Virus record (IMG/VR): IMGVR_UViG_3300044645_002359 | Coordinates: 62,001 to 126,000 of that record | Direction: 5' to 3' (one strand) | Length of the DNA stretch: 64,000 nt | Part shown: positions 3,835 to 27,793 of the stretch, one piece after another | How the letters are laid out: each line of letters opens with the position of its first letter | Numbering within the stretch: the stretch's first letter is position 1 | Position numbers and translations under genes: made by a program | Notes under the pieces: model-generated | The model's input: only the letters and a program-made list of their open reading frames with translations | Database searches by the model: none | What the model was told of the DNA's origin: nothing

Positions 3835-3906
3835 GCCCTGGTAGCTCAGTGGAAGAGCAGCGACCTTCTAAGTCGTCGGTCGGGGGTTCGAATCCCTCTC
3901 AGGGTG
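3835..3906 (+). tRNA. tRNA-Arg(TCT)
   Basis: Cloverleaf: GCCCTGG/TCAGGGT acceptor, GCGAC-CT TCT AA-GTCGT, TTCGAAT T-loop; no encoded CCA. Confidence 0.95.
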
Positions 3907-4241: not shown

Positions 4242-4325
4242 TTTGATTTTGGGTAATAATGACCATGCTTTGTAACCAAAGCATTAACAACCTGCATTAG
4301 CAATCTACGCTAACAACGACAAAAA

Positions 4326-4871
4326 ATGGCAAACACCAATCTAATTAAAAAACTAACGGAAAAATGGTCTCAGCCTGATAGTATGCCTGGTAAAGGATAC
4401 GAACTGGTTAAAGCCCTAAAGCAAGATTATTATGTACAGCCCTTATCATTTTGCAATCTAGAAAATTCATCTTCGAAAGAAGGGTCTGAATGGGCCATCT
4501 CAGGTGGGAGAGAAGAGAAGTTCAAGCCAAGATTCAACGCACCCAAAGGTTTCAATTCATAAGCCATGTCACTAATTTCCAAACAAGATAAAGAACTCGC
4601 AATCGAAGCCCTTGATTTTTACGCATCAGAGTTAATCTTAGAAAGGGAATTTCTCACCTCAGGGGTAGATTCCAAACTTGGATACGTCTCCGCAGGCTAT
4701 GATTCTGCTCAAAACGATATTATTCTAAATGAGGTTGACTCCTTAGCCAAGGCTGGCATTCACTGCGAAAGTTCCAATGCTCGTGCAGTTTTGTCTAACA
4801 AGATTCGGAGCGTTCAAACCCTTAAAAACTGGATTGCATTGGACCTTGCCAAGTCTAATTTGAAAGGTTAG
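4326..4871 (+). CDS. Two hypothetical proteins (4326-4562, 4566-4871)
   Basis: Plus-strand ORFs between tRNAs. Confidence 0.5.
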
Positions 4872-4920: not shown

Positions 4921-5841
4921 GTGAAACTCGAAGCCGTTATTGTTTGCGTCAACTACTCTGACTTTTTGGCGCATACCCTACCAAGTACCAGAAATCAATT
5001 CGATAAACTTGTAGTTGTTACCGATACTAAGGATAACGATACTAAGAAGCTATGCGAATACTACAATGTAGAATGTGTTCAAACAGACGTATTCTATGAG
5101 GGGGGAGACGCATTTAATAAAGGTAAGGGTATCAATGCCGGTTTAGAGCGATTGGACCTTGATGGCTGGGTTATTCACTTAGATTCAGACATTTACTTGC
5201 CACCTCAAACACGGTCGATTCTAGAGAATTTGCCTCTAGATAATGGGAAAATCTACGGGGCTGACCGTCTAATGTGCCCTGGTTACGAAGAGTGGTTGAG
5301 ATTCTTAGATAAACCCTCCCCTATTCAAGACTCTTGGATTTTCATCCACCCTACAAGATTCCCGGTCGGAGTCCGAATCGCAGAGTATAAAACTTGGCAC
5401 GGTGGCTATGAACCAATTGGCTACTTCCAGCTATGGAATCCAGAAGGGTCAGGTATTCACCGTTACCCGAATGAACACGGGTTCGCCGACCGTACAGATG
5501 TTCTGCATTGCAAAAAATGGCCTAGAGAAAAAAGAGAATTGCTTCCTGAAATTCTCGTTATACACCTAGAAAGCGAAGCAGGAATAGGTCTAAATTGGAA
5601 AGGCAGAAAGACTCCAATGTTTGGGCCAAAAGCCACCTTGCCAACCCTATCTTGGCTGGACAAACTATTTTTATTCTTAAATAAATTAAGCAAGTGCGGT
5701 TACAAACCTAACCTTAAAGTCTCAAAGGAATCAAAGAAAGAAAAATTAAGTAAGTTAGAACAAGGTGAGATAAAAGTCATAGGTGCAGGCTCAATTGAAG
5801 GTCCATTAGATGACTCATTGGAAGAGTGGCTGAGAGGCTGA
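4921..5841 (+). CDS. GT-A fold (GT2-like) glycosyltransferase
   Basis: VIVCVNYSDFL, FNKGKGIN, DxD motif HLDSDI, GYFQL. Confidence 0.75.
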   Translation: MKLEAVIVCVNYSDFLAHTLPSTRNQFDKLVVVTDTKDNDTKKLCEYYNVECVQTDVFYEGGDAFNKGKGINAGLERLDLDGWVIHLDSDIYLPPQTRSILENLPLDNGKIYGADRLMCPGYEEWLRFLDKPSPIQDSWIFIHPTRFPVGVRIAEYKTWHGGYEPIGYFQLWNPEGSGIHRYPNEHGFADRTDVLHCKKWPREKRELLPEILVIHLESEAGIGLNWKGRKTPMFGPKATLPTLSWLDKLFLFLNKLSKCGYKPNLKVSKESKKEKLSKLEQGEIKVIGAGSIEGPLDDSLEEWLRG

Positions 5842-5904
5842 TAGCAGCAGTTTCGAAAACTGCAGAGGGTTAAACCTCCGGGGGTTCAAATCCCTCCTCT
5901 TCCG
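5820..5904 (+). tRNA. tRNA-Ser(CGA)
   Basis: GGAAGAG/CTCTTCC acceptor, GCAGT-TT CGA AA-ACTGC, long V-arm, G discriminator. Confidence 0.93.
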
Positions 5905-12184: not shown

Positions 12185-12987
12185 GTTCTGCGCTGAAGAA
12201 ATGATACGGTTCGCTCAAGCTAATCCCCAAGTTCAAAAAGAAAAAGACCACGAAGGACGGAGTGAAATGATTTCTTTTATAGCTTTACAAAATTGTAACT
12301 ATTTAGATTATCTCCAGGATAGAGAAGACAGCTTTTCTTTAAAGCCGAAAAATGTTTCTAATCCCTTAAGAAGTTCCAACCCGGCCTTCTAAACTGTGTC
12401 ACTTAACAAGAAAAGTCTAATCACCGAAAAAATGAACGACAACTTAAGCAGGATTAAGCCCAAGCTGAGAACCGAGGGTCGAGTCTCAGGCAACTTCGGC
12501 AGAAATAAAGTTGAGGGAAAAAGACAGACTCTGGATCTGAGCTCCAGCATATTGAACAAAGACATTTTGAGGATCCCCGATCCCCGAAAAGTTTACGAAA
12601 GGCTGGAACAAGCCTATACTATTACCACAGACCCCGAGCTGAAAGCTTTCCTAGCTGAAATGCTTAAGAAGCGTAAAGCAACGACCCAGACTAAAGTAGC
12701 CGAAAAAACTGCTCGTCCTCGGTCCGAATACTGGGAGGAAGTTAACCGTGTACGGTAACCCTGTGACTTATAAATCGCCTCTTCGAATATACGAAAACCT
12801 ACCATCACTTGTAGTTTACAAGTGCTCTCAAACAGAGACTGTGGTTGGTAAGGTTTACAAAACTCCCGAAGGGAAGTGGTTTTTAGCAACACGATATGTA
12901 AGCCATTGGCAACCTATTGAGGTATTTGCTAAGTACCAAGGTTTCCTTTTTCTAAACAAACTTCACAAACAACACACTCAAACTTGA
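12171..12987 (+). CDS. Three hypothetical proteins (12171-12392, 12396-12758, 12748-12987)
   Basis: Contiguous plus-strand ORFs. Confidence 0.5.
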
Positions 12988-12993
12988 GTCAAA

Positions 12994-13086
12994 CGTTCAG
13001 GCTGCTTCGGCAGCCCGGAAGTAGGTGACAAAGGAACGCATTCGTTCAGTCTGTTTACAGGCCGGGATTGTCTCCAAAGGAACGCG
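12994..13086 (+). ncRNA. Tandem glutamine-riboswitch-like (glnA motif) aptamers
   Basis: Two units CGTTCA-stem-...-AAAGGAACGC (12994-13039, 13043-13085); unit 1 has GGCTGC-TTCG-GCAGCC and CGGAAGTAGG. Confidence 0.72.
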
Positions 13087-13109
13087 CAAAGCAACCCTAG
13101 GAGAACACA

Positions 13110-13229
13110 ATGATTAACACTTCAGACAATTCAACCAAAGGTCTCAACCCTCTGTTTCTTATCAAAAAAAGCCTTATCAAAGAAAGCAAACTCAAAGAAG
13201 CACAGCTTGAGATGGCCAAGAAACCCTAA
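13110..13229 (+). CDS. 39-aa peptide downstream of riboswitch (not in ORF track)
   Basis: AGGAG SD at 13099; MINTSDNSTKGLNPLFLIKKSLIKESKLKEAQLEMAKKP. Confidence 0.72.
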   Translation: MINTSDNSTKGLNPLFLIKKSLIKESKLKEAQLEMAKKP

Positions 13230-13240
13230 ATTCTATAAAA

Positions 13241-13501
13241 ATGAGCTATATCCCTGTTTTAGTATTGCTTCCAGAGCCAGAAGCCGAAGAAATTCACCGA
13301 TCTGTAAACCTTTCTAACCATGAATGGCTTGTTCTTTCTCAATGCACAGAATCTTTTTCTGCTGCTTACCGGGAAAGTCACAGCCAAGTGATTGCAACTT
13401 ATGTCACTCGTGGGCAGCTAGATTTAGCTGTTGAAGAGGCGGCGAAAATGAACGGTTTGCTACAGCAACTCGATAAAATTCAAGCCAAACTTGTATCCTG
13501 A
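13241..13501 (+). CDS. Hypothetical protein
   Basis: ORF track. Confidence 0.5.
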   Translation: MSYIPVLVLLPEPEAEEIHRSVNLSNHEWLVLSQCTESFSAAYRESHSQVIATYVTRGQLDLAVEEAAKMNGLLQQLDKIQAKLVS

Positions 13502-13509
13502 CGAATCAA

Positions 13510-13908
13510 ATGCTTAGCAATGTTCCCCCTGTCGTGTTTGACATTGACATGACATTGACCAGCGAATGGTACTACAATGACAACGTCACTCGACTCCACG
13601 TGAACAAGCCGATCGTTCAACTTGCAAGAGCACTTGTTGATTCAGGAGTTCCAGTTGTGATTTCGACCGCTCGACCCGAACGATTGAGAATTGACTCTCA
13701 AATTTGGCTTCGAGGCATCGGGCTCAAATACGAAGCCTTGTATATGAGAGAAGACGGGGACGACCGTCCAGATCACTACGTTAAAACCGAACAAGCACTT
13801 TCGATTATCGAAGATTTCGGACGCCCTATGTTGTGGTATGACGACAACGCGGACAACTGCAAAGTTGTGAAAAACCTGGGAATCCCCTGCATACAAGTAA
13901 TTCAATGA
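13510..13908 (+). CDS. HAD phosphatase (PNK 3'-phosphatase-like)
   Basis: FDIDMTL, STARPE, LYMR..D.RPD..K, YDD. Confidence 0.85.
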   Translation: MLSNVPPVVFDIDMTLTSEWYYNDNVTRLHVNKPIVQLARALVDSGVPVVISTARPERLRIDSQIWLRGIGLKYEALYMREDGDDRPDHYVKTEQALSIIEDFGRPMLWYDDNADNCKVVKNLGIPCIQVIQ

Positions 13909-15117
13909 AGAAGGATCAAAAAGAAATAAGTTTAAAACCTCCGATTAAAATTGGCCTAAAAGAGGCTCAAAACCGCAGGGATTTGATGGCGACTATGGCA
14001 GAGATGAGCCAGCACTTACCTAACGTTTCTTCGGAAAAGCAAGAGCTAGTGGCTCAGTTCATGGTAGAACAACTCCGTGGGGCGGCTAACCGAACCGAAC
14101 CGTTCGGTTCTAACCCTGACTCCTAATGGAGACCCAAGCTAAACTAAAATTACCGAAACAACTTCCAATGGTTACCGAATCCGAAATTTCCATTACGTTT
14201 AACAACGAATCTTGGAAGCTCTTGTACGACCTTTTAAAAGTGAGGCAATATTCTCTCGAGCGCGATGTTGCCCGGGCAGACGAAACTGGCTCAATGGACT
14301 TTGCGCAAATTCTCCTGGACGAAGCTGCTGAATGCAAGGAGATTTCCGATCTGATCTCATTTAACATTACTCTCAACAACTTATCAGAAGCCTTTGTAGA
14401 TTAAAGTAAAGTTCACTGTTCACTCGCGAAGCTTTCATGCTATCCCCGAATACAAGGCTACGGTTAGAAAACATTGCAGATAGGATTTCAAAAAACGAAG
14501 AGGTTTCATTCGAAGAAGCCTCGTTCATTCAAAAATGGGCGAACCATAACCGTCACGCTTATGAGATCCTTCAGAGGGCTAGGCGGAGGGCAATATCGGG
14601 GGAGCCTGAGCCGGGGTCGCTTGACGATCTTATCGACGGTATGAACCTCGGCTTTGCAGATCCCTCCTCTCACCTAATCGGTCCTCAATCTCCAGACGAC
14701 CTTGCAAACTTTTTCAAAGCACCACCCTGGCTCAAAAATGACTGATAAACTCCCTGAAGAAAGCCTTGAGCTGTACGACGATTGCTTTCACGTGAAAGAA
14801 AGTGCGTGTAAAACTTGGAATTCTTGTCAGACTGATGGAACCAAACTAGTCACTTCATTGTCAAAACAACTTTGCATTAACGCCACCCGCTTCTACCTGA
14901 AAAATAAACAGGAAACATCCTTAGAAAATGTCAGAACTTACGAAGGAACGGTCGGAGGGAAACTTTGACTGCCGAGAGTAAACTGGAAACCTTGGACCCC
15001 TTAACTCCTTGGTACGAGTTTCTTTCATACTGCGAAGTTTGTCGGAGTCTGGGTGTGACTCCTTCAGTGGGCCGTTTCACTCGCTATCAAAACTACCTGA
15101 AGACAATCAAACAATGA
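13905..15117 (+). CDS. Run of small hypothetical genes (13905, 14126, 14437, ~14738, plus untracked 14965-15117)
   Basis: Coupled ORFs; MLS..TRLRLE.I, YEGTVGGKL and PWYEFLSYCE motifs recall cyanophage hypotheticals. Confidence 0.55.
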
Positions 15118-16058
15118 CAAACGAACTAACCAGCCCCATGTTAGATAGAGCCAAAGGCTGCTTAATCGGACTCGCAATCGGCGATGCCTTGGGTGCGCCA
15201 GTAGAATTTGGCAGTTACGGGTCTTTTGACCCTGTTGTTGGGTTCAGGGATGGAGGACCATTCAACCTTAAAGCGGGCCAATGGACCGATGATACTTCTC
15301 AGGCTTTGTGCTTGGCCGACTCCATTCTGTCCAACAAAGGGTTTAGCCAAGGCGACTTCCTAAACAGGATGATTAATTGGAAGCAGTATGGACACAACAG
15401 CAGTACTGGGAAGTGTTTTGACATTGGAATCGGAACGGCCCATGCTCTCCAGTCTTATAGCAGCACAGGCAAGGTGCCAGTGAATACAAATTCAGGTGGT
15501 AACGGAAACATAATGAGGCTCGCACCGGTTGCTATAGCTTTCTTTAGGGATAACTACAAAACCCAAGAGATTGCCAGCCTGTCGAGTCTAACTACCCATG
15601 GCCACATTTCAGCATTAACTTGCGCGGACTTCCTCAGTGTGATGCTAAGGTCTTATATCGTAAGTAGTGATTGCGAAGGGGACATTACATATAACTGTCA
15701 AACTAACGAGGAAACTTATGAAATTGACCTGTGTAGTGTGACTCTGGAAAGAATAGCGAATGCTGTGACTTCTGAGGAAAGTGAGTGGCATAATGTAAGC
15801 GGATTCTCAACCGACACTTTGTGTGCAGCTTTGTATTGTTTCTTCAACACGGAGTCCTTTGAAGAATGTGTATTGGCTGCGGTAAACCTTGGCGGAGACG
15901 CGGATAGCGTAGGCGCCGTAGCTGGACAAATTGCAGGAGCTTACTACGGGCTTTCCGGTATACCTCAAAGATTCATTGTTGGATTGCAGGACAGCGATAA
16001 GTTTCTGAATTTGGCAGAACAATTATTTAACTTGTATCGAAACAAAGATGAAAACTAA
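15114..16058 (+). CDS. ADP-ribosylglycohydrolase
   Basis: GLAIGDALGAPVE, WTDDT, GNGNIMRLAP, GGDADSVGAVAGQIAGA. Confidence 0.95.
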   Translation: MTNELTSPMLDRAKGCLIGLAIGDALGAPVEFGSYGSFDPVVGFRDGGPFNLKAGQWTDDTSQALCLADSILSNKGFSQGDFLNRMINWKQYGHNSSTGKCFDIGIGTAHALQSYSSTGKVPVNTNSGGNGNIMRLAPVAIAFFRDNYKTQEIASLSSLTTHGHISALTCADFLSVMLRSYIVSSDCEGDITYNCQTNEETYEIDLCSVTLERIANAVTSEESEWHNVSGFSTDTLCAALYCFFNTESFEECVLAAVNLGGDADSVGAVAGQIAGAYYGLSGIPQRFIVGLQDSDKFLNLAEQLFNLYRNKDEN

Positions 16059-18725: not shown

Positions 18726-20213
18726 ATGACTATGGCAATAGAAAGTACAAAGCAAGCCGCTGCGGCAGTCTGCGATAAAAATACCAAATGCGACAATAGC
18801 TGCTCCGTTGGTGAAACCGTTGTCTGTGACTTACGCTCTCGCTCTGCCCCACGCAGAATTGACCTCGATACACTTTACAAGTGCGACCCGAAAGATTACA
18901 TCGGTTACTTCGCTGACGATTCCTCCTACGACAATCTTATTCAAGAAGACTGCGACGTTTACGTTGCCGGTGTCAAAGTTGTCGCTTTTCGTAAGTCCCT
19001 GTTCCCAAAACTGAAGGAAGGTTCCAAGGGCGACCCAAAGACTTGGGAATACTTCCGCTGGGCAGCCCGCGATCTGTATTCTGACCAGCGCGGTCTGGTT
19101 GCCGGTCGGGAACTTACAACCGATCTCGAAATCAGAGTAACTAATGGTATTCTAAACTTCTTCAAAAAAGCCATTGCTGGGCAAGTCACAGAAGTTGAAG
19201 AGGCTCTTAAAATTGTTGCTCTTTCTCCAGATCATGGTAAGCTTACAGTAAGAATCACCGAAGTCAAGAAAGACTATCCGGAAATTGCCAAAGCTCTTGA
19301 GCCCATCGAAGCCGAACTTCGTAAGAAAACGACGAGCGAAGAAAGAAAAGTAGAGCTGAAGAAAGCAAAGGGAGAAGAACTTGCGAAGTGGTTCCCGACC
19401 TGGTTGACACGAACTTGGGCTAAGGCTGAAAACAAAGTAGAGGCAGCTAAGCTAGGGGACGACAGGTATATCAGCAAGCAGCTGCGTTCAAACAAGTGCT
19501 ATTCTAACGTTCTTGGTGCCTTCGATAGAGGGGCAAGAAATCCTTACGGTCGCTTAACCGCTACTACTCTTAAAAACTACGACGGTTTCGTGAGTCATAC
19601 AGACATCTACCAAACCGCTTGTGCCGCTCTGAAAGAAACCCTAAACACACAAGAAAACCCCCGTTGGGATCGTCTTCACGACCGCTTCGGTAACGTGAAA
19701 GATCCACATTATAACCTTTTCGGTACGGTATTTACCGCCCTCACCTTAAACTGGAATTTCCGCTGTGCTATGCACTATGACGGGAACAATTGCGAAGGCG
19801 GTATTGCCGTTCTTACCGCAATGACTCAAGGCGAGTACGAAGGTCATTACCTTGTATTCCCAGAAATCCGGTGCGCCTTTGATCTTCGTGACGGGGACTT
19901 TATTGCAGGTGACAACCAGGGTTTGATTCATGGCAACACCGCTATGATTCCAAAGACTCCTGATGCGGAAAGAGTATCCTTCGTTTTCTATTCTCGCGAG
20001 CGTATGACCTTGCTTGATGACATGGAGTGCGAGGACTGCCGCCGCGATTTCATGAAATACGCAGCTGAGAACTACACTCAGTACGGTAAAGGTCACAAAA
20101 CCTGGAATGGTGTGTGGCAGGGAATGTGGAAGTCTTCGGAATGGATGGACTTCAAAGAACTTAACGGTGCGGAGCGTTGCTCAAACACCAACTACTGGGG
20201 AACTGAAAATTAA
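18726..20213 (+). CDS. TET/JBP-like 2OG-Fe(II) dioxygenase 1
   Basis: FGTVFTALTLNWNFRCAMHYD, G.Y.G.YLVFPE, HGNT, RVSFVFYSRE: HxD...H triad plus 2OG-binding Arg. Confidence 0.85.
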   Translation: MTMAIESTKQAAAAVCDKNTKCDNSCSVGETVVCDLRSRSAPRRIDLDTLYKCDPKDYIGYFADDSSYDNLIQEDCDVYVAGVKVVAFRKSLFPKLKEGSKGDPKTWEYFRWAARDLYSDQRGLVAGRELTTDLEIRVTNGILNFFKKAIAGQVTEVEEALKIVALSPDHGKLTVRITEVKKDYPEIAKALEPIEAELRKKTTSEERKVELKKAKGEELAKWFPTWLTRTWAKAENKVEAAKLGDDRYISKQLRSNKCYSNVLGAFDRGARNPYGRLTATTLKNYDGFVSHTDIYQTACAALKETLNTQENPRWDRLHDRFGNVKDPHYNLFGTVFTALTLNWNFRCAMHYDGNNCEGGIAVLTAMTQGEYEGHYLVFPEIRCAFDLRDGDFIAGDNQGLIHGNTAMIPKTPDAERVSFVFYSRERMTLLDDMECEDCRRDFMKYAAENYTQYGKGHKTWNGVWQGMWKSSEWMDFKELNGAERCSNTNYWGTEN

Positions 20214-20301
20214 CCCTTAGGTCGGTTACCGGAGCGGAGTAGATTCAAATTTACTCTGCTTTTATCCAGCTATATTAGAACTGAAGTTTACCAAGAGAGA
20301 A

Positions 20302-20526
20302 ATGACAAACTTTGACGACCTCTTTGAAGCAGTAGAATCTTCTTCATACGACTTGTCCAGAAACCTGGACACCATACGTTATGAAATTGAAGGTCTCACT
20401 AGGGAATATGAGGAACTACTTAATCTGTTGCAAGTTTCTGACCATCAGTCAGCGGTAGAAGCAATTATTTCTCTTAAGTCTAAACGAGATCTTACTGCAC
20501 CTCGGAGAGGATCGGAAACGCTTTAA
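20302..20526 (+). CDS. Hypothetical coiled-coil protein
   Basis: ORF track. Confidence 0.5.
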   Translation: MTNFDDLFEAVESSSYDLSRNLDTIRYEIEGLTREYEELLNLLQVSDHQSAVEAIISLKSKRDLTAPRRGSETL

Positions 20527-20616
20527 CGAAGTCCATATCAAAAGCTAATAACACTTATAGAGACCTTGTGGATTTGAGCTAACTCTCTTTAATTTCACCA
20601 CTATACGACAACAAAC

Positions 20617-20928
20617 ATGACGACTGAACCGCAAGCCGAAAGTGAAGAACAATCCTCTCAGGAAACTTTACAAACAACTGTTACTATCAATCTACCCCCA
20701 GATTTTGCAGAGGCTTTCAACTCTCTGGCAGAACGCGAAGGACTATCTCAAGATGCGCTGGTTATGCGCTCTCTTGGCCTTTACTCCGTAGCATCGCAAG
20801 CTGAGAAGGGGGGTTACGCTTTGTCTTTCACCCGGATTGAAGGAACCAACGACCTGACTGCCAAGGAAGCTATTCGCATCGAAGACGAGCCAGAATCTAA
20901 CTTGTTTATTCCAGGCAAGAGGCAATGA
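20617..20928 (+). CDS. Ribbon-helix-helix (CopG-like) protein
   Basis: VTINLP....F..LAEREGLSQ..LV.R.L.LY. Confidence 0.6.
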   Translation: MTTEPQAESEEQSSQETLQTTVTINLPPDFAEAFNSLAEREGLSQDALVMRSLGLYSVASQAEKGGYALSFTRIEGTNDLTAKEAIRIEDEPESNLFIPGKRQ

Positions 20929-22411
20929 TTCGAGTAGCAATAGCGAAAGAATTGCAGTCTAGAGCTGAACCATTGCGGATCGATAGGGGAACCCTTGAAA
21001 ACTGCCCTCGCAGTGAATACATTGGACAATTCCCCAAGACAACAGATTATGACACTGTCATAGACAAAGACTGTGACGTTTACGTCTCAGGTGTGAAAGT
21101 CTTGTCCTTCCGAAAAGCTCTCTTTCCAATTCTTTCCGAGGGTTCTTCCAAACAGAAAGAAACTTGGGACTTTTTCCGAGCAGCTTCAAAAGAAGTTTAT
21201 GGCACCCAAAGAGGTGTCGTTGCGGGCACAGAGTTTACAACTCGTCCCGAGTCACGCTTAACTAAAGGCCAGGTTGCTTTCTTCGCCGGTGCTTCAGTGG
21301 GTTTGATTACAACGCTTCCTCAAGCGCGAGAGGCTCTGGAAAGTTCCAACGAACTCACTAGCAAGACTCTCAAGATCAAGTATATAAAGAAAGACTACCC
21401 AGAACTTGCGGAAAAATGAAGCCCTTGGAGGCAGAAATTCGCACACTGAGCCCCGAAGACCCGAAACTAGAAAGTCTGAGAAACCAGAGAAGGGAACTAC
21501 TTTGGTGTTGGTTTGAACCTTGGTTACTGGAAGTTTGGTTGCCCTCTGAAAACAAAGTAGAAGAAGTCAAAAAAGTTTTAAACACTTACATTAGCTCTCA
21601 GTTAAATTTCAACCATTGCTACAGTAACGTCCTGGGGGCAATTGACCGTGGGGCAAGATTCCCCTATGGTCGTTTGAGCGGAACCACTCAGAGATACTAT
21701 GAGCAGTTCTCTAAATACAGAGACATTTATTACGCGGCCTGCGAAGGTTTCAGGTACAATTTTCCGGAGACCTGGAGCAAAGTTAAAGAAGTAATTTCGA
21801 AGGCTAAAGACCCTAACTACAACTTGTTCGGCACTGCCTTTACGAGCGTAACTCTAAACTTCAATTTTAAGACTGCCTACCACGTTGACAAGAACAACTT
21901 GAAAGGGGGGCTGGCTGTCTTGACTGCGTTCACAAAGGGAGACTATGAGGGCCACTACTTAGTGTTCCCCGAAGTTAAGCTAGCTTTCAACTTGAGAGAC
22001 GGGGACTTTATCGTAGGAGACACTCAAGTCCTACTTCACGGGAACAGCCCCATGACAAAACTCACTGAGGATGCTGAGCGGGTTTCTCTGGTTTTCTACT
22101 CTCGAGAGAATATGACCCGATTGGACGATCTTGATTGTGAAGAATGCCGAAAACAATTCATGAAGTTTTCACTTCAGTCCCTGAAGGAACGGGGCAAAGA
22201 TCACAAAGACTGGAGGGGCGTGTGGCAAGGAATGTGGACTTCTCAGGAGTGGTTAGACTTTCGAAAAGAAAGAAACTTGGAACACTGTTCAAACTCCAAC
22301 TGGCAGCTTTCTTCGCCTTACGAGAATGAAGTTACGAAAGAGATGAAGCTGTTTAAGGACGATCCAGGTGAGGGATGGAAACTCGTACAAGTATTTACAC
22401 AAGGTCGGTAA
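20925..22411 (+). CDS. TET/JBP-like dioxygenase 2, split by a 1-nt frameshift (20925-21419 + 21416-22411)
   Basis: Colinear paralog of 18726; [17 protein letters not shown]; break in A5 run at 21412-21416. Confidence 0.82.
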
Positions 22412-22476
22412 CCGCCCGGAAGCCTTCGGCTTCCTCCCTTGTTTCTGATCCACATAAACGCTATGATTGTTGTATG
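22406..22476 (+). promoter_or_regulatory. Operator-promoter module copy 5
   Basis: CGGTAACCG; TTGTTT-17-TATGAT-6-ATG(22474). Confidence 0.85.
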
Positions 22477-23058
22477 GAAATCTACTTTAGCACAGACGTT
22501 GAAACTGACGGGCCGATTCCCGGCCCCAACAGCATGCTCTCCCTAGGGTCAGCTGCGTTCTCCTCTTCAGGAAAGCTGCTGGCTACCTTCTCGGTGAACC
22601 TGGAGACCCTCCCCGGAGCCGAGCCGGACCCCTCTACCCAAGCGTGGTGGGAGGCCCACCCAGAGGCTTACAGAGCCTCCAGAGAAGGGACCCTGGCCCC
22701 GGACCAAGCCATGCTTGCCTTTTCACAGTGGGTCACTGCTACGGTCAGCTCGTACACTCAAGCGACTGTTAGAAAAGTTTCTCCAGTATTCGTCGGGTTC
22801 CCTGCAGGTTTTGACTTCCTCTTCGTGTATTGGTACCTTATTAAATTCACAGGGCAATCCCCGTTCAGCTTCTCCGCACTTGACGGTAAGACCTATGCCA
22901 TGGCACTTCTTAAGAAAGGCTACCGGCAATCTACAAAAAAGAACTATCCGAAGGAATGGTTCCCCCCGACTGACAAACACACTCACATTGCTGTGGAAGA
23001 TGCCATCGAGCAGGGTCGTATTTTCTGTAAGATGCTGGCCGCAAATGGACAATCTTGA
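22474..23058 (+). CDS. DEDDh 3'-5' exonuclease
   Basis: [19 protein letters not shown]; start refined by promoter geometry. Confidence 0.85.
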
Positions 23059-23454
23059 AATTTACAACCGTAAGCATAAGCTCGTGCTAGAACTGAGAGA
23101 ACTAGGCGAAGAAGAAGCTGAAGATAGCCTGTTGGAGGAGTTGGACGATCTCTGGCATAAGATGAATGAATCAGACCGTCATAAGGCCCAAGCTTTCACC
23201 TATACTTTGCTTTACGGATCCTCCTTACCCCCTACAATCTCCCATTCAGAAAAGATGAGAGAGTACTCTGGAAAAGTTAATGCATCTTTTAAGGCGCTAC
23301 TGGAAGGGGATATCGAAACTAGTGATACTCTCCTAAAGGAAGTCAGATCGCTATGGGAAGAATTAATCTCAGATGATTTCCCAGAAGAATGATTGAGATC
23401 CTAGCTGCATTCATAGCCTTCGGCTTGTTCATGTTTGTATTATCTGTCCTTTAA
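23045..23454 (+). CDS. Hypothetical (23045-23392) and 21-aa hydrophobic peptide (23389-23454)
   Basis: MDNLEIY...; [21 protein letters not shown] with ATGA overlap. Confidence 0.5.
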
Positions 23455-23466
23455 CTCTCAACCTTA

Positions 23467-24231
23467 ATGAAAGACCCACTCTTCCTTCTCCAAGCCGGAG
23501 GCCCGCTACCCACCGAGAAAATTGCCTGCAGCTTTTCGTGTTATCCAGTGAAGTATTGTCCTTTTTCGGATATCAAGAAGTTAGACCCCAAGGAATCCTT
23601 AACTCAACTTGTCCCAGTAGGTTCCGTAGAGTTTGTTAAAGCTTATAGTGAGCACGTGAGCATCGAGCTTCCCAGGGACTTTTCTTATGGCATTTGCGAC
23701 GGTCAACTTGACCAGTTCCTGATGAGATCTATGCGAAAGGGGACTTACGGTGAGGCAACCCTTATTGATTTTGTCAAACCCATTGAGATAAAGTTTTTCA
23801 CAGGAAATGTAAAAGGGCATCTTGAAATGGAGGCACCGGGGCTCATTCCGAATGATACTCCAGTCTGGGTTACCGAAGCCGTACCCTTCGGAGCCGAATT
23901 TCGCTTCTATATTCACGACTTCATTGGTGGTGGTAAAATCCAAGGTTGGTCTCGATACGATGATTCAAACATGCAATGTTCAGAGCCTGACTTTGGCCTG
24001 GTTGAAGCCGTAATGAAAGAGTTGGAGTACGGGGGTGCTCCAGGTGCCTATACAATTGACATTGGGTGGAGGCCTGATTTAGAACGCTATTGCTTAGTTG
24101 AACTCAATGATGCATGGGCATTAGGATTATACGAAAATGCAGACCCTCAATCTAATCCACCTACCCGACAGCAGTACGCCGATATGTTGGTCTCTCGCTG
24201 GAGACAAATTCTTTTCTGCAGTTTAGTATAA
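23467..24231 (+). CDS. ATP-grasp domain protein (DUF4343/R2K-like)
   Basis: PVGSVEFV, FVKP...K.FTG, EFRFYI, AYTIDIG, LVELND. Confidence 0.8.
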   Translation: MKDPLFLLQAGGPLPTEKIACSFSCYPVKYCPFSDIKKLDPKESLTQLVPVGSVEFVKAYSEHVSIELPRDFSYGICDGQLDQFLMRSMRKGTYGEATLIDFVKPIEIKFFTGNVKGHLEMEAPGLIPNDTPVWVTEAVPFGAEFRFYIHDFIGGGKIQGWSRYDDSNMQCSEPDFGLVEAVMKELEYGGAPGAYTIDIGWRPDLERYCLVELNDAWALGLYENADPQSNPPTRQQYADMLVSRWRQILFCSLV

Positions 24232-24890
24232 TGTGTGCTTTATTCGGATGTGACCTAGAAGAAGTCACGCAAAACAACATCCAAACAATACAACGCATTG
24301 CTCTTGAATCACAGGTCAGAGGCAAACATGCTACTGGCATCTCCTACATTGGAAAAAACGGTCTTGAGACAATCACTGAGCCTGTTTGTGCACAGGAATT
24401 TCTGAACATCTATGACATAAATGTTTGTGTCTCAGACGGCTGTCTGACTTTGATCGGTCATTGCCGCTATTCTACCTCTGATATTCGGTATAACCAGCCG
24501 CTAACGAACGGATCTCTTGCTATTGCTCACAATGGTGTCATTGAGCAGTCGCCTCCAGAGACTTGGACAAAGTTTGGGTACCAGCTAGAAACCACCAACG
24601 ATTCAGAGCTTGTGCTTCGAGCTATCGAAAATAAAGAACAACCCCTGAAAAAGTTTCCTGAAGCTTCTATGGCTGTCTTGGAGCTAAGAGAGACTGGCTC
24701 CATGCGCTATTACCGCAATGGTAAGAGACCTTTATGGAAGAGCGAAGTTGAGAACGGTTTTTTCCTCACCTCAACAAAAGACATTGCATTGAGGGCGGGA
24801 TTGAAGAATCCGGTCCGCTGCCTTCCGGGCTTCCTTTACCAAGGGAAGGCAGCAACTAAAATAATTGAAGTTGAAGAGCTGATTGCATGA
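24231..24890 (+). CDS. Class II (Ntn) glutamine amidotransferase
   Basis: N-terminal MC, RG.HATG, GHCRYST, NQP, HNGVI, NDSE. Confidence 0.88.
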   Translation: MCALFGCDLEEVTQNNIQTIQRIALESQVRGKHATGISYIGKNGLETITEPVCAQEFLNIYDINVCVSDGCLTLIGHCRYSTSDIRYNQPLTNGSLAIAHNGVIEQSPPETWTKFGYQLETTNDSELVLRAIENKEQPLKKFPEASMAVLELRETGSMRYYRNGKRPLWKSEVENGFFLTSTKDIALRAGLKNPVRCLPGFLYQGKAATKIIEVEELIA

Positions 24891-25765
24891 CTTACGATCC
24901 TCGAAAGTTTACATATGGTTACGAAATTGAGTGGGGGGATATACCGAGGGATTTCAACATACCTAAGCACTTGGGAACTTGGGAACATGCGGAAACTGAC
25001 ATCCTAAATTTGCACGGGGATTACGCTCTTAGAGCTGTAGATCCTTTGGGAACTGACCCACCCATGGGCGGCGAGATAAACACCAAGCCAACTCATACCT
25101 GGGAAGAGCAAGTTGAGAGAATCATAGAAATTCGCGACATGTTTATCAACGTCGGACACAATCCGACTGCATCTTTGGTGAACCACGGTCACTTACATGT
25201 TTTCGTGCCAGGGCTGAAGGAAGACTTAACAAGCTTACAAAAATTGGTCTCTTACGTTCGAGACAACCAACAACTGACTGTAGAAAAGTGTTACGGTTAC
25301 TATGACGATCCGGACATGAAGGGGGCGGTCAGAGGAGCCAAGACTTACTTGAAGCTCGATGGGGGCAGGTTAATGCCTCAGTACATGATTGATAACATAC
25401 TGAATTTGTCCACGGACTTTAACCACTTGATTAAGTTGCACGCTGCAGGCAAAGATGGTGTGTCAATGGGACGACCGTTCCGGTATGCAATAAACATCTA
25501 CTGTATGAAGCACACAGGTACTGTTGAGTTCCGCTGTTTTAGATCTAGTGTAAATCGCCGAGAGATTGAAGATCAGTTTCGCTTCGTAGAGGCATTCATT
25601 GATGCCGCCCTTAATGATGGTCCACCTGTTGAAACTATTCTTAAAGAGAACAATTATCAGTTCCCCCCTTACGTATGGAACAAGGAACACTGGAATGCTT
25701 GGGCGCTTACCAAGTGGGACAAGTCCAGGGGCAAAAAAGTCAGAAATTACTACGAGGTCCAATGA
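24887..25765 (+). CDS. Putative amidoligase (COOH-NH2 ligase) 1
   Basis: TYGYEIE, GGEINT.P, HLHV, RYAIN, TVEFRCF. Confidence 0.8.
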   Translation: MTYDPRKFTYGYEIEWGDIPRDFNIPKHLGTWEHAETDILNLHGDYALRAVDPLGTDPPMGGEINTKPTHTWEEQVERIIEIRDMFINVGHNPTASLVNHGHLHVFVPGLKEDLTSLQKLVSYVRDNQQLTVEKCYGYYDDPDMKGAVRGAKTYLKLDGGRLMPQYMIDNILNLSTDFNHLIKLHAAGKDGVSMGRPFRYAINIYCMKHTGTVEFRCFRSSVNRREIEDQFRFVEAFIDAALNDGPPVETILKENNYQFPPYVWNKEHWNAWALTKWDKSRGKKVRNYYEVQ

Positions 25766-26712
25766 TTGAGGCTACTTTCGGTGCTGAATATGAACTCGGA
25801 GACGTCAACCGCTTGCTGGAACTGCCTACTGGGGCGAATTGGAACTTTAAAGATCACAGCATTGCCAATTCCACGGGTATCGCAAATGATGAAAAAGCCA
25901 AGTTGTATACCATTGGCGGTGAGATAAACTCCGAGCCAACAGACACAATTGAAGGGCAGTTGAAAATCTGGGAATCTATAAGGGATTCCCAAAGTCAGAT
26001 TCATATTAATCACAGGACCAATTTACACTTACACATTCATGTGCCTGGGTTGAGAGAAGACCTTGGTCGGTTGAAGCGTCTGATGCAATACGTTCAAGAA
26101 CAACAAGACAGGGTCTACCAATTAATAGAACCCTTAGATCCCCCTGAGAAAGAAAATTACAAAACAGCAGCATCTTATAAGGGTGCTATGGATCGTTACA
26201 AGCGCCGTTTAGTTAGTCATCAGAACAGACTCAAACCGGCCCAGGTTAAGTCTTGTATGGAAGCCGTGACTGCTGAAGAGTTTATCAACGGTCACGCACC
26301 GAAAAACAAGAAGGGTGAACCCTTGTGGGCTTTGGCAGTTAGAGGTGGAATCAATATATCTCAACTTCGTGAAACTAATACAATTGAATTCCGGCACTTT
26401 ACACCTACCTTGAGTGCAGAAGAGCTAGAGTGTTGCTTCACTTGGATCCATGAGTTCATGCATGCCGCCTTGGTTACAGGCGAATCTGTCGATGATATCT
26501 ACTCAAGAAAAACCTGGAAGTTCCCACCGTTCGCTGCCTACGACCACGATATCGATGTGGTTTTCCGCTGGACAGACTTGGAAAAGAACAAACGTTCCGA
26601 AGTGAAACAACGACTCGATCGCTTGGCAGAACACTTTGATACTTATTCCCAACCAGCGAGGGATATGTCAGAATTTGTCAGCTCAGAAAGTGGTGGAAAA
26701 CTAGCTCTTTGA
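25762..26712 (+). CDS. Putative amidoligase 2 (paralog)
   Basis: TFGAEYE, GGEINS.P, LHLHIH, RGGIN, TIEFRHF; ATGA overlap. Confidence 0.8.
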   Translation: MIEATFGAEYELGDVNRLLELPTGANWNFKDHSIANSTGIANDEKAKLYTIGGEINSEPTDTIEGQLKIWESIRDSQSQIHINHRTNLHLHIHVPGLREDLGRLKRLMQYVQEQQDRVYQLIEPLDPPEKENYKTAASYKGAMDRYKRRLVSHQNRLKPAQVKSCMEAVTAEEFINGHAPKNKKGEPLWALAVRGGINISQLRETNTIEFRHFTPTLSAEELECCFTWIHEFMHAALVTGESVDDIYSRKTWKFPPFAAYDHDIDVVFRWTDLEKNKRSEVKQRLDRLAEHFDTYSQPARDMSEFVSSESGGKLAL

Positions 26713-27088
26713 TTTGCTGAGCTACTGCGCGATGCATTTCTTCACCCTTGTGTCTGAATGGGTCTTCAACGTTCCAGTTTCGAACCTTCAACGGATCCAC
26801 AGAAAAGTTCTTGTTTATACGGTCTACGTGCAAATGAGACATGCAAATGACTTGGTCCGCCCAGTCCAACAAGTCTTGAGAGTAAGGTTGTGCGATGTGT
26901 TGCTCACCACTGTAGCCCATCTCTGCCAAAACTCGTCTCATTTTGGGAGCCATTCTTGAGCGGTCCACAGCTTGTTTAGAAGTGCCACACGAATCTACTT
27001 TGTACAATCCCGTATTATGAAAACTAAGGATAACATGAGCAGCAGCACTACGATTCACACACCCTGTACAAATAAAGAGTACTTTCAT
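26678..27088 (-). CDS. LMW phosphatase / arsenate-reductase fold protein
   Basis: VLFICTGCVNRS (CX5R), WAD.VICM, EDPF. Confidence 0.88.
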   Translation of the reverse strand: MKVLFICTGCVNRSAAAHVILSFHNTGLYKVDSCGTSKQAVDRSRMAPKMRRVLAEMGYSGEQHIAQPYSQDLLDWADQVICMSHLHVDRINKNFSVDPLKVRNWNVEDPFRHKGEEMHRAVAQQIKELVFHHFLS

Positions 27089-27136
27089 GTTCAGTGCCTA
27101 TAATAAGTATGCATAACCTTACCCTAATGCTTCGTC

Positions 27137-27793
27137 ATGTACTATGTATACAAAATAACTTTCGAAGAGGTACCCCACTTTTACATTGGAATTCGCAAGT
27201 GCCCACCCCTTATAGCACCACAGGAGGATAAATACTTGGGAAGCCCTTGCACACACCGGTCTTATTGGAAAATATACACACCCAAAAAACATATAATGCA
27301 TTGCTACGAGAGTCAAGAAGAGGCTTACCAGGTGGAGCACACCCTTATTATACAGAACTGGAAGAATAAGTATTCCTTGAACAGAGGGGTTGCAGGAGCT
27401 GTACACGAAGAGATATTATCGAATAATGGCAAAAGAGTGGCACAACTCTGGCACAACCGGGTTGAAGAGGACCACAAATTAAGAGAGTGGGCAACGGAAA
27501 ATGCTAGAAAATGTTTGTCTGGGTATCATGAGAGACGTCAGGAGAACGAGGAGGAAAACGAAAGATTTCTAAGTCAATGTTCCGAGAACGGGAAGAGAAC
27601 AGGAGCCTCTAACATAGGCAAATATAACGAAAGAAAAGATGAGCTGGAGTATATAAGAGTAAGAAAAGAGAACGGCAGGAACCGAAAAGGCATGATTTGG
27701 ATTAACAACGGCTCAGAAAATAAAGTGGTCTGGCCGCACATGATGGAGGAGTACTCTACCCGGGGATACAAAAGAGGTAGGAAACATGCTTGA
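27137..27793 (+). mobile_element. Free-standing GIY-YIG-like homing endonuclease
   Basis: YVYKIT...FYIG, D.YLGS, E..LI, SLN; C-terminal WINNG..NK. Confidence 0.7.

What the first reader, a model, noticed from the sequence alone, without database searches (positions are those of the whole stretch)
12994..13229. Tandem glutamine-riboswitch-like RNA controlling an unannotated 39-aa peptide
Two aptamer-like units with CGTTC/GGAACG P1 precede an SD and a basic helical peptide (LIKKSLIKESKLKEAQLEMAK). Unit 2 lacks the GGAAGTA E-loop. In cyanobacteria such riboswitches control small proteins, including the glutamine synthetase inactivating factor GifB. Inference: the phage senses host nitrogen status, possibly tuning GS. 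Glutamine and 2-oxoglutarate are also the co-substrates of the modification locus.
Basis: partly seen in the sequence, partly recalled or inferred. Interest (0 to 1): 0.62.

Follow-up and report, generated by a model that had tools for sequence, protein, structure and literature searches.

The report
Phage glutamine riboswitch with altered second unit
A freshwater cyanophage carries a genuine glutamine-sensing RNA switch ahead of a tiny helical peptide gene, a known arrangement in phages, but its second "sensor" copy has lost a hallmark loop and instead carries a sequence that can mask the ribosome-binding site.

Summary
Unit 1 (12992-13042) passes Rfam's Glutamine (glnA, type I) cut-off at 41.3 bits against 35. 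Unit 2 (13041-13088) scores 30 bits: it matches everywhere except the E-loop/P3 block. A strong SD and a 39-aa ORF (13110-13229) follow.

Most of this is a known kind. More than 120 IMG/VR viral contigs carry such aptamers 20-33 nt before 16-65-aa ORFs, and tandems are described in the literature. The peptide belongs to an uncharacterised, apparently phage-restricted helical peptide family (>=163 clusters) that sits behind glutamine riboswitches.

Unit 2 is the unusual part. Of 57 distinct tandem junctions sampled, only this lineage has an E-loop-less second unit. The replacement segment (13067-13075) is complementary to the SD and start codon. In predicted ensembles the SD is fully paired here, but open in a natural single-unit relative and in a swap control. 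I read unit 2 as a former aptamer now serving as the expression platform; this is inferred, with no covariation support.

The GifB / glutamine-synthetase idea is unsupported: the peptide has no DUF4278 and no arginine. No link to the Tet/JBP modification locus was found. The host is probably a lake picocyanobacterium.

The parts
12992..13042 (+). Unit 1: canonical type I (glnA) glutamine aptamer. P1 is 12994-12998 with 13034-13038. P2 is 13000-13005 with 13010-13015 (UUCG loop). E-loop 5' strand GGAAGUA is 13017-13023. Mini-P3 is G13024:C13029 closing a GUGA loop. The presumed linchpin C is 13039.
   Evidence: RF01739 41.3 bits, above gathering 35. P2 keeps pairing through two one-sided changes in close relatives and two compensatory pairs in outgroup L247. 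Atypical details: an A instead of G before AAGGAACG, and the shortest P3 spacer of 194 distinct units.
13041..13088 (+). Unit 2: E-loop-less derivative of the aptamer. P1 strands are 13043-13047 and 13080-13084. P2 is 13049-13053 with 13058-13062 (UUUA loop). CGG is 13063-13065 and the C after P1 is 13085. The E-loop/P3 block is replaced by 13066-13075.
   Evidence: RF01739 30 bits, below gathering, E 1.4e-5 per genome. RF01704 gives only 12.8 bits over the 5' half. It is the only E-loop-less second unit among 57 distinct phage tandem junctions. The one P2 substitution among relatives, G13061A, turns U:G into U:A.
13034..13047 (+). Inter-unit hairpin. The 3' P1 strand of unit 1 (GAACG) pairs with the 5' P1 strand of unit 2 (CGUUC) across the 4-nt linker CAUU. 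It is mutually exclusive with both P1 helices.
   Evidence: Present in the MFE and centroid folds. The 4-nt linker is at the short end of the 3-11 nt range seen in phage tandems.
13067..13075 (+). Proposed anti-SD segment AUUGUCUCC inside unit 2. It is complementary to GGAGA (13100-13104) and CAAU (13108-13111) with a 3-nt bulge.
   Evidence: The helix appears in the MFE and centroid folds. SD P(unpaired) is 0.00 with it, 0.57-0.92 when it is swapped for the unit 1 segment, and 0.8-0.98 in the natural single-unit leader L128. Only 99 of 5000 random 10-mers pair as well, but a whole-leader shuffle is not significant. There is no covariation.
13099..13103 (+). Shine-Dalgarno AGGAG, 6 nt before the start codon.
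   Evidence: Read directly from the sequence. One relative (L130) has AGAAG.
13110..13229 (+). 39-aa peptide gene. Residues 1-8 are predicted disordered and residues 14-37 form one amphipathic helix. It has 8 Lys and no Arg. Core motif: LxLIK...KE...K.AQL.MA.
   Evidence: An HMM built from 117 family members without this lineage finds it as the only significant hit among 1500 six-frame segments of the window (E 9.2e-6). The family has at least 163 clusters. It gives a weak phrog_545 hit. AF2 shows a helix at mean pLDDT 80. It is conserved in outgroup L247.

Best explanation
This is a translational glutamine riboswitch in the polycistronic mRNA of a freshwater cyanophage. It gates a 39-aa helical peptide from a family that phages repeatedly place behind glutamine riboswitches.

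Unit 1 is the glutamine sensor. It is a compact type I aptamer with a GNRA-capped one-pair P3.

Unit 2 is a former second aptamer. It keeps P1, P2 and the nucleotides that contact glutamine in solved structures (CGUUCA, CGG, GGAACGC). Its E-loop/P3 block has been replaced by AUUGUCUCC, which pairs with the SD and the first two bases of the AUG.

Proposed mechanism (inferred):
1. Without glutamine, the 3' P1 strand of unit 1 pairs with the 5' P1 strand of unit 2, and the unit 2 segment masks the SD, so translation is off.
2. Glutamine stabilises P1 of unit 1.
3. That frees CGUUC of unit 2 to close its own P1.
4. This disfavours the SD-masking helix, so translation turns on.

What is shown: family membership of unit 1, the anatomy of unit 2, peptide family membership, and predicted SD masking that depends on the unit 2 segment.

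What is inferred: the ON polarity (by analogy with the tested gifB and MED4 switches), the relay between the units, and any glutamine binding. The peptide's target is unknown.
For: Unit 1:
- It is above Rfam gathering.
- P2 pairing is preserved in relatives, and outgroup L247 shows two compensatory pairs.

Unit 2:
- It is a significant but sub-threshold match that lacks only E-loop/P3.

SD masking:
- In 161 canonical phage leaders the SD's predicted partner is the linker just 3' of the aptamer in 139 and inside the aptamer in only 8. This matches the mechanism proposed for gifB (PMC6212724).
- Here that linker has no anti-SD. The partner lies inside unit 2, with SD P(unpaired) 0.00.
- Replacing the segment in silico, or its natural absence in L128, opens the SD.
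- The two independent contigs that lack unit 2 (L128, L250) also carry a +1 frameshift that removes the conserved C-terminal half of the peptide.

Context:
- Phage glutamine aptamers precede 16-65-aa ORFs in nearly all of more than 120 contigs.
- The peptide's family membership is independent of this lineage.
- The tested glutamine riboswitches are ON switches (PMC6698751).
Against: - The anti-SD helix has no comparative support. All tandem carriers are about 99% identical in the leader, so the helix simply never varies.
- Leader-wide, a duplex this strong with the SD region is found in 31% of shuffles. The 2% figure applies only to a segment chosen after seeing the fold.
- P1 of unit 2 and the anti-SD helix could coexist as an H-type pseudoknot, so their mutual exclusion is not established. 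Nearest-neighbour folding cannot model glutamine binding or tertiary contacts.
- Unit 1 deviates at a position that is G in 193 of 194 other units, so even its binding is unproven.
- No promoter, transcript or RNA-seq evidence was found.
Confidence: 0.55

Rival explanations
1. This is a true two-sensor tandem. Unit 2 still binds glutamine despite lacking the E-loop, and the two aptamers give a steeper (pseudo-cooperative) response, as proposed for other glutamine doublets.
For: - Tandem glutamine riboswitches are common: 157 doublets and 4 triplets (PMC9481103), and 13 of 120 phage loci here.
- Unit 2 keeps every nucleotide block shared by the type I and II ligand sites (CGUUCA, hairpin, CG(G), GGAACG-C).
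- Type II shows the E-loop can be replaced by another turn (PMC6698751).
Against: - All 50 complete second units in other phage tandems keep GGAAGUA exactly, and 193 of 194 units keep the partner G. This implies strong constraint on the E-loop in working aptamers.
- Unit 2 falls below the family cut-off.
- Only 3-4 nt separate the replacement segment from the P1 3' strand, unlike the 8-nt turn of type II.
Confidence: 0.2
2. Unit 2 is a decaying duplicate with no role. Regulation, if any, comes from unit 1 alone, and the complementarity to the SD is coincidental.
For: - The whole-leader shuffle test is not significant (622 of 2000).
- There is no covariation.
- The lineage is narrow and young (about 99% leader identity).
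- Both the outgroup L247 and L128/L250 work with, or at least carry, a single unit.
Against: - The differences between units 1 and 2 are concentrated in the P2 upper stem and loop and the E-loop/P3 block. P1, CGG and the 11-nt 3' block are identical. This is not the pattern of uniform decay.
- P2 of unit 2 still pairs, and its polymorphism strengthens a pair.
- Unit 2 is what sequesters the SD in the predicted ensemble.
- The leader is less variable (3 of 122 nt) than the upstream ORF (22 of 240 nt) in the X5 contig comparison.
Confidence: 0.2
3. This is an OFF switch with type II-like topology. The unit 2 segment and the SD/start region form a helix that stacks under the P1 pseudoknot helix in the glutamine-bound state, so glutamine represses the peptide.
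For: - The strand order (5' P1 strand, hairpin, CGG, helix 5' strand, GGAACG, helix 3' strand) matches the glutamine-II pseudoknot (PMC6698751).
- The 5' half of unit 2 aligns to RF01704.
Against: - RF01704 scores only 12.8 bits against gathering 33, with the 3' 34 model positions unmatched.
- The spacers differ strongly from type II: 3-4 nt against 8, and 15 nt against 2.
- Both experimentally tested glutamine riboswitch types are ON switches.
Confidence: 0.08
4. One reading: the peptide is a functional analogue of the glutamine synthetase inactivating factors (IF7/IF17). It lets the phage shut down host GS when glutamine is high.
For: - In cyanobacteria glutamine riboswitches mostly control gifB/DUF4278 genes (PMC6212724).
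- A 43-aa branch of this peptide family fuses a YRGVKY (DUF4278-like, E 0.074) N-terminus to the same helix, which loosely recalls the two-part IF17.
- The peptide is basic and helical.
Against: - There is no DUF4278, NCBIfam or PDB match.
- The peptide has no arginine, whereas three conserved arginines are essential in IF7.
- The family was found in only 1 MAG contig among 185,579 species genomes, so it does not look host-derived.
- Related riboswitch-peptide cassettes occur in phages of hosts that lack GS (PMC9004378).
Confidence: 0.1

Closest known systems
Glutamine-I (glnA RNA, Rfam RF01739) riboswitch, e.g. the gifB leader of Synechocystis 6803
   Same: Unit 1 has the same P1, P2, CGG, GGAAGUA and GGAACGC core and passes the family cut-off. 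It sits immediately upstream of a small ORF. Translational control through SD masking is the proposed mechanism in both.
   Different: - The host is a phage.
- The E-loop 3' strand reads AAA, not GAA.
- P3 is reduced to one G:C pair plus a GNRA loop, the shortest of 194 units.
- The anti-SD is not in the linker 3' of the aptamer but inside a second, degenerate unit.
- The controlled gene is not gifB/DUF4278.
Tandem (doublet) glutamine riboswitches surveyed by Sherlock et al. 2022 (PMC9481103), and phage doublets such as L020, L024, L041, L063
   Same: Two head-to-tail units with identical P1 sequences, a short linker, one SD and one small ORF.
   Different: In every other complete phage doublet sampled (50 distinct) the second unit keeps the E-loop. 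Here it is replaced. The 4-nt linker is also at the short extreme of the 3-11 nt range.
Glutamine-II (Downstream-peptide motif, RF01704)
   Same: It shares the ligand-site nucleotides. It has no E-loop. A strand between the hairpin and GGAACG pairs with sequence 3' of GGAACG. It precedes a short peptide ORF.
   Different: It scores far below the cut-off at 12.8 bits. The long-range pair polarity is type I (G...C). The loop lengths are incompatible with the solved type II fold. Type II is reported only from marine picocyanobacteria.
Phage riboswitch-associated small peptides (phrog_545-like; the KNNWQLxLIKQQKEKEQRK, KLNFLQLIKEQ and YRGVKY-fusion branches)
   Same: The same conserved helix core (LxLIK...KE...AQL) and the same position 20-33 nt behind a glutamine aptamer.
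   Different: This lineage is a divergent freshwater branch (38-46% identity) with a longer N-terminal tail and no arginine. No member has a known function.
IF7/IF17 (gifA/gifB) glutamine synthetase inactivating factors
   Same: Small, basic proteins. gifB is under a type I glutamine riboswitch.
   Different: No sequence similarity was detectable. The peptide has no DUF4278 and none of the essential arginines. The family appears phage-restricted.

Membership tests
Glutamine-I riboswitch (RF01739): unit 1 | Covariance-model score at or above the curated gathering score | tested here: met
   41.3 bits against 35.
Glutamine-I riboswitch (RF01739): unit 1 | P2 hairpin maintained by covariation | tested here: met
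   Window against L247: C:G to U:A and G:C to A:U (both sides changed), and U:A to U:G. Close relatives show G:C to G:U and U:A to U:G. The sample is small.
Glutamine-I riboswitch (RF01739): unit 1 | E-loop: GGAAGUA opposite GAA | tested here: inconclusive
   The 5' strand is exact. The 3' strand has A where 193 of 194 other phage units have G. The same A is kept in the diverged outgroup L247, which suggests it is tolerated.
Glutamine-I riboswitch (RF01739): unit 1 | Selective binding of L-glutamine and ligand-dependent gene control | not testable with these tools
   Needs in-line probing, ITC or reporter assays.
Glutamine-I riboswitch (RF01739): unit 2 | Covariance-model score at or above the gathering score | tested here: not met
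   30 bits against 35, although E is 1.4e-5 per genome.
Glutamine-I riboswitch (RF01739): unit 2 | E-loop and P3 | tested here: not met
   15 model positions are replaced by 10 unrelated nt. This is the only such case among 57 distinct tandem junctions.
Glutamine-I riboswitch (RF01739): unit 2 | P1, P2 and ligand-site nucleotides (C1, G2, CGG, C58, G59, C60 equivalents) | tested here: met
   All are present at 13043-13047, 13049-13062, 13063-13065 and 13080-13085. Residue roles are taken from PMC6698751.
Glutamine-II riboswitch (RF01704) | Covariance-model score at or above gathering; P2 helix and PK loop | tested here: not met
   12.8 bits against 33. Only the first 26 of 60 model positions align.
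Tandem (two-aptamer) riboswitch | Two complete ligand-binding aptamers in series | tested here: not met
   The second unit is incomplete. Whether it still binds ligand is untestable here.
GifB/IF17-like GS inactivating factor | DUF4278 (PF14105) N-terminal domain | tested here: not met
   No Pfam hit even at E <= 10, and no YRG motif.
GifB/IF17-like GS inactivating factor | Conserved arginines needed for GS inactivation | tested here: not met
   The peptide contains no arginine. The requirement is from PMC6316151.
GifB/IF17-like GS inactivating factor | Binds and inactivates glutamine synthetase | not testable with these tools
   Needs a biochemical assay with the host's GS.
Phage riboswitch-associated helical peptide family (phrog_545-like) | Profile match to the conserved helix core, with the profile built without this lineage | tested here: met
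   E 9.2e-6, 21.9 bits. It is the only hit among 1500 six-frame segments. phrog_545 gives E 0.0046.
Phage riboswitch-associated helical peptide family (phrog_545-like) | Gene lies directly downstream of a glutamine aptamer | tested here: met
   The ATG is 25 nt after unit 2. The same context is seen in L007, L009, L011, L021, L031, L037, L059, L061, L081, L107 and L111.

The most novel reading that the evidence does not exclude
A glutamine aptamer copy has been converted into a dedicated expression platform. It keeps P1 and P2, so it can receive a strand-exchange signal from the upstream sensor. Its E-loop/P3 has been rewritten into an anti-SD/anti-start sequence. That would be a two-module relay riboswitch architecture not described for this class. 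Loss of the module in nature (L128, L250) is accompanied by inactivation of the peptide gene, hinting that unregulated expression of the peptide is costly.
Probability: 0.35. Interest if true: 0.6.

Novelty: new variant of a known kind. Interest (0 to 1): 0.4.

Why it matters
Glutamine riboswitches are the only known way cyanophages could read host nitrogen status directly through RNA. What they control in phages is a set of tiny peptides whose function is unknown.

This locus adds three things:
- A freshwater, non-T4-like cyanophage lineage to the marine examples.
- A compact aptamer variant.
- A natural three-state series: a single unit, a tandem with a degenerate second unit, and a unit-2 deletion with a broken peptide.

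That series could be used to dissect how the expression platform of this class works. It also documents a large peptide family that is a clear target for functional work. On its own it does not change what is known about the riboswitch class.

Tried and rejected
- Nucleotide search of the locus against 50,697 phage records found no match. tblastn of the peptide also found none, probably because of low-complexity masking. The nearest isolate, S-CBWM1, has no RF01739 hit.
- Pfam, NCBIfam, PDB-sequence and ESM-Atlas look-ups gave nothing usable for the peptide.
- The complex prediction of the peptide with Synechocystis GS (GLN1B_SYNY3) returned no verdict. It is not evidence either way.
- Covariation test of the proposed structure, including the anti-SD helix: no two-sided changes, and observed values equal the shuffles. 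It is uninformative because the relatives are about 99% identical.
- The whole-leader shuffle of SD complementarity is not significant.
- Type II membership is rejected.
- The inter-unit hairpin was flagged as 'terminator-like'. I rejected this because the stem is 5 bp, the T run is interrupted, and the count is within shuffle expectation.
- No sigma-70-like promoter or GTA-N8-TAC site lies within 200 nt upstream.
- No RNA runs hold the stretch. The contigs laid on it added only the variants already seen.
- Ren et al. 2015 and Ames & Breaker 2011 are not held in the library. E-loop mutational data could not be consulted.
- Small minus-strand ORFs overlapping the leader (37-40 aa) have no support and were not pursued.

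Full report
**1. What is in the sequence**

On the + strand, the 79-aa ORF 12748-12987 ends 6 nt before two head-to-tail units that share CGUUCA...AAAGGAACGC.

- Unit 1 (12992-13042) matches Rfam RF01739, the type I glutamine (glnA) aptamer, at 41.3 bits against a gathering score of 35.
- Unit 2 (13041-13088) was hidden by overlap in the first scan. It scores 30 bits (E 1.4e-5 for the 201-kb record) when searched alone or genome-wide.
- The unit 2 alignment is clean for P1, P2, CGG and the 3' block. The model's 15 positions for the E-loop and P3 are replaced by 10 unrelated bases.
- An AGGAG at 13099-13103 and an ATG at 13110 open a 39-aa ORF with the quoted sequence.
- These are the only significant RF01739 matches in the record. 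RF01704 (type II) reaches just 12.8 bits on the 5' half of unit 2.

**2. Whose genome this is**

- The window is bases 62001-126000 of a 201,260-bp IMG/VR virus record, estimated 71% complete.
- Its gamma-like DNA polymerase hits only cyanophages. The best is Synechococcus phage S-CBWM1 at 57.5% identity. S-CBWM1 itself has no glutamine aptamer.
- The runs that hold the stretch are lake and freshwater metagenomes. None is RNA.
- The host is therefore most likely a freshwater picocyanobacterium. This is inferred.

**3. How ordinary the arrangement is**

- In almost every case a 16-65-aa ORF starts 20-33 nt downstream. About one locus in ten is a strict tandem.
- The literature already records glutamine riboswitches in T4-like cyanophages, pelagiphages and an OM43 phage (PMC9964418, PMC9004378).
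- It also records 157 doublet and 4 triplet arrangements (PMC9481103).

A phage glutamine riboswitch in front of a micro-ORF, even in tandem, is a known kind.

**4. The peptide**

- Several downstream peptides in the sampled loci resemble this one. They align on a core LxLIK...KE...K.AQL.MA.
- A profile of that alignment finds 163 clusters, all 'hypothetical'.
- To avoid circularity I rebuilt the profile from 117 members, excluding this lineage. The window's ORF is then the only significant hit among 1500 six-frame segments (E 9.2e-6; the next is 1.5).
- AlphaFold predicts a floppy N-terminus and one helix at residues 14-37.
- The family gives a weak phrog_545 match of unknown function. It has no Pfam, NCBIfam or PDB relative.
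- It appeared on only one MAG contig among 185,579 species genomes. Within the limits of that pattern scan, it looks phage-specific.
- A 43-aa branch fuses a YRGVKY N-terminus (DUF4278-like, E 0.074) to the same helix.

**5. GifB and glutamine synthetase**

IF17 is defined by DUF4278 plus an IF7-like C-terminus whose conserved arginines are needed for GS inactivation (PMC6316151). This peptide has no DUF4278 hit and no arginine. It fails the membership tests I could run. A functional analogy remains possible but has no evidence, and I give it about 0.1.

**6. Unit 2 is the unusual part**

- I collected 57 distinct tandem junctions from IMG/VR: 50 second units keep GGAAGUA exactly, and 2 are cut off by contig ends.
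- Another 4 are not aptamers at all. In these a repeated CGTTCATTAC is followed by an ORF.
- Exactly one second unit is E-loop-less, and it is this lineage (L235 = L127).
- In 161 canonical phage leaders the SD's predicted partner is the short linker just 3' of the aptamer in 139 and inside an aptamer in only 8. This agrees with the mechanism proposed for gifB.
- Here that linker (13085-13098) has no anti-SD. Instead, the segment that replaced the E-loop, AUUGUCUCC (13067-13075), pairs with GGAGA and CAAU of the SD/start region in the MFE and centroid folds.
- The SD's probability of being unpaired is 0.00 in the window leader. It is 0.57-0.92 if the segment is swapped for the unit 1 equivalent, and 0.8-0.98 in a natural relative that lacks unit 2.
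- In the same folds the 3' P1 strand of unit 1 pairs with the 5' P1 strand of unit 2 across the 4-nt linker. This links the state of the sensor to unit 2.

**7. Relatives**

- Seven contigs (L127, L129-L133, L251) keep the tandem with about 99% identical leaders.
- The only leader substitutions are two in P2 of unit 1 (G:C to G:U, U:A to U:G), two in P2 of unit 2 (U:G to U:A, and one break of the closing pair), and one in the SD.
- In the X5 contig the leader differs at 3 of 122 nt, against 22 of 240 nt in the upstream ORF.
- Two independent contigs (L128, L250) have a single canonical unit: the 5' part of unit 1 joined to the 3' flank of unit 2 at the CAAAGGAACGC repeat. Both carry the same extra A, which frameshifts the peptide before its conserved AQL.MA half.
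- A more distant, syntenic outgroup (L247/L248; the flanking ORF is clearly homologous but much diverged) has a single unit. It shows two compensatory P2 pairs, the same unusual CAAAGG, a GNRA-capped one-pair P3, a homologous 42-aa peptide, no SD, and an alternative hairpin CAAAGGA/UCCUUUG.
- The clade's aptamer is itself atypical. The A before AAGGAACG is G in 193 of 194 other units, and its P3 spacer (7 nt) is the shortest.

**8. Strength of the mechanistic claim**

- It is moderate at best.
- The anti-SD helix never varies, so covariation says nothing.
- Only 2% of random 10-mers pair with the SD region as well as the segment does. But that segment was picked after seeing the fold, and a whole-leader shuffle does as well in 31% of trials.
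- P1 of unit 2 and the anti-SD helix could coexist as a pseudoknot, the same strand order as type II. An OFF reading therefore cannot be excluded, although both tested types are ON switches.
- Whether the tandem is ancestral (with L128/L250 as deletions) or a duplication is unresolved. The deletion scenario needs no burst of divergence in unit 2.
- I read the coincidence of unit 2 loss with peptide frameshift as a hint that unregulated expression is disfavoured. This is speculation.

**9. Link to the modification locus**

Two Tet/JBP dioxygenases, an R2K ATP-grasp and an amino-acid:DNA transferase lie at 18.7-28.8 kb. They are more than 5 kb and many ORFs downstream. Nothing ties them to the riboswitch except shared metabolites.

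**10. Verdict**

- This is a real, known kind of element: a phage type I glutamine riboswitch plus a micro-peptide.
- It carries a lineage-specific variant, a second unit stripped of its E-loop and carrying an SD-complementary segment.
- It is best explained as an aptamer turned expression platform (confidence about 0.55 for the whole statement; about 0.85 that it is a glutamine riboswitch controlling this peptide).
- Novelty: new variant of a known kind. Interest: 0.4.

Noticed in passing
L128:2793-2990 and L250 (minus strand, about 4260-4600): Two independent contigs of the same phage group carry a single-unit leader, 46 nt shorter, joined at the CAAAGGAACGC repeat. Both have the same +1 A in an A-run that frameshifts the peptide to a 33-aa product lacking the conserved C-terminal half.
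   Followed up: partly
L247:609-900 (minus strand) = L248: A diverged syntenic relative on a 65.5-kb contig has a single compact aptamer with the same rare CAAAGG and a GCGA-capped mini-P3. Its upstream ORF runs about 23 nt into the aptamer. It has no SD, and a 7-bp alternative hairpin CAAAGGA/UCCUUUG competes with P1. The 86-aa ORF is absent.
   Followed up: partly
L036, L147, L225, L232 (coordinates): A canonical aptamer is followed after 3-4 nt by a repeated CGTTCATTAC that is not a second aptamer. A hydrophobic approximately 57-aa ORF starts 12-25 nt later. The repeat can pair with the P1 3' strand, so this looks like a distinct expression-platform type.
   Followed up: no
Upstream of phage glutamine aptamers in loci L007-L242 (e.g. 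L007, L011, L037): A GTA-N8-TAC (NtcA-box-like) palindrome lies within 70 nt upstream in 39 of 175 distinct loci, against 11 in a control interval. It sits at fixed distances of 24-25 nt or 1-3 nt from CGTTCA. There is none upstream of the window's riboswitch.
   Followed up: partly
Proteins P0004, P0005, P0011, P0019, P0021: Public gene calls for this peptide family are often extended at the N-terminus by 18-28 residues. The extension is a translation of the riboswitch itself (for example ...EVPKREATHQYP...), so these are mis-called starts.
   Followed up: no
window 18726-28802: A DNA hypermodification-type cluster: two Tet/JBP 2OG-Fe(II) dioxygenase paralogues (18726-20213, 21416-22411), an R2K ATP-grasp (23467-24231) and an amino-acid:DNA transferase (27786-28802).
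   Followed up: partly
window 15009-16058, 36146-37225, 29928-31271: An ADP-ribosylglycohydrolase (E 1.6e-69), a histone-deacetylase-family protein (E 1.6e-86) and a PAP2-domain protein. This is an unusual set of accessory genes for a cyanophage.
   Followed up: no
window 3835-3906 and 5820-5904: Two tRNA genes (64.7 and 54.6 bits). The second has a long variable arm.
   Followed up: no
window 13227-13244 and 13499-13512: The 86-aa ORF (13241-13501) and the HAD/PNKP-type phosphatase (13510-13908) start 11 and 8 nt after the preceding stops and have no visible SD. They might be translationally coupled to the peptide and so share its regulation. The 86-aa protein has no Pfam or PHROG match.
   Followed up: no
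window 56547-59483 and 52681-54696: A gamma-like DNA polymerase (57.5% identity to S-CBWM1; 30-35% to S-TIM5-like, A-HIS and Mic1 phages) and a topoisomerase II. They place the phage in a sparsely sampled cyanophage group. Relatives reach contigs of 241 kb (P0122).
   Followed up: partly
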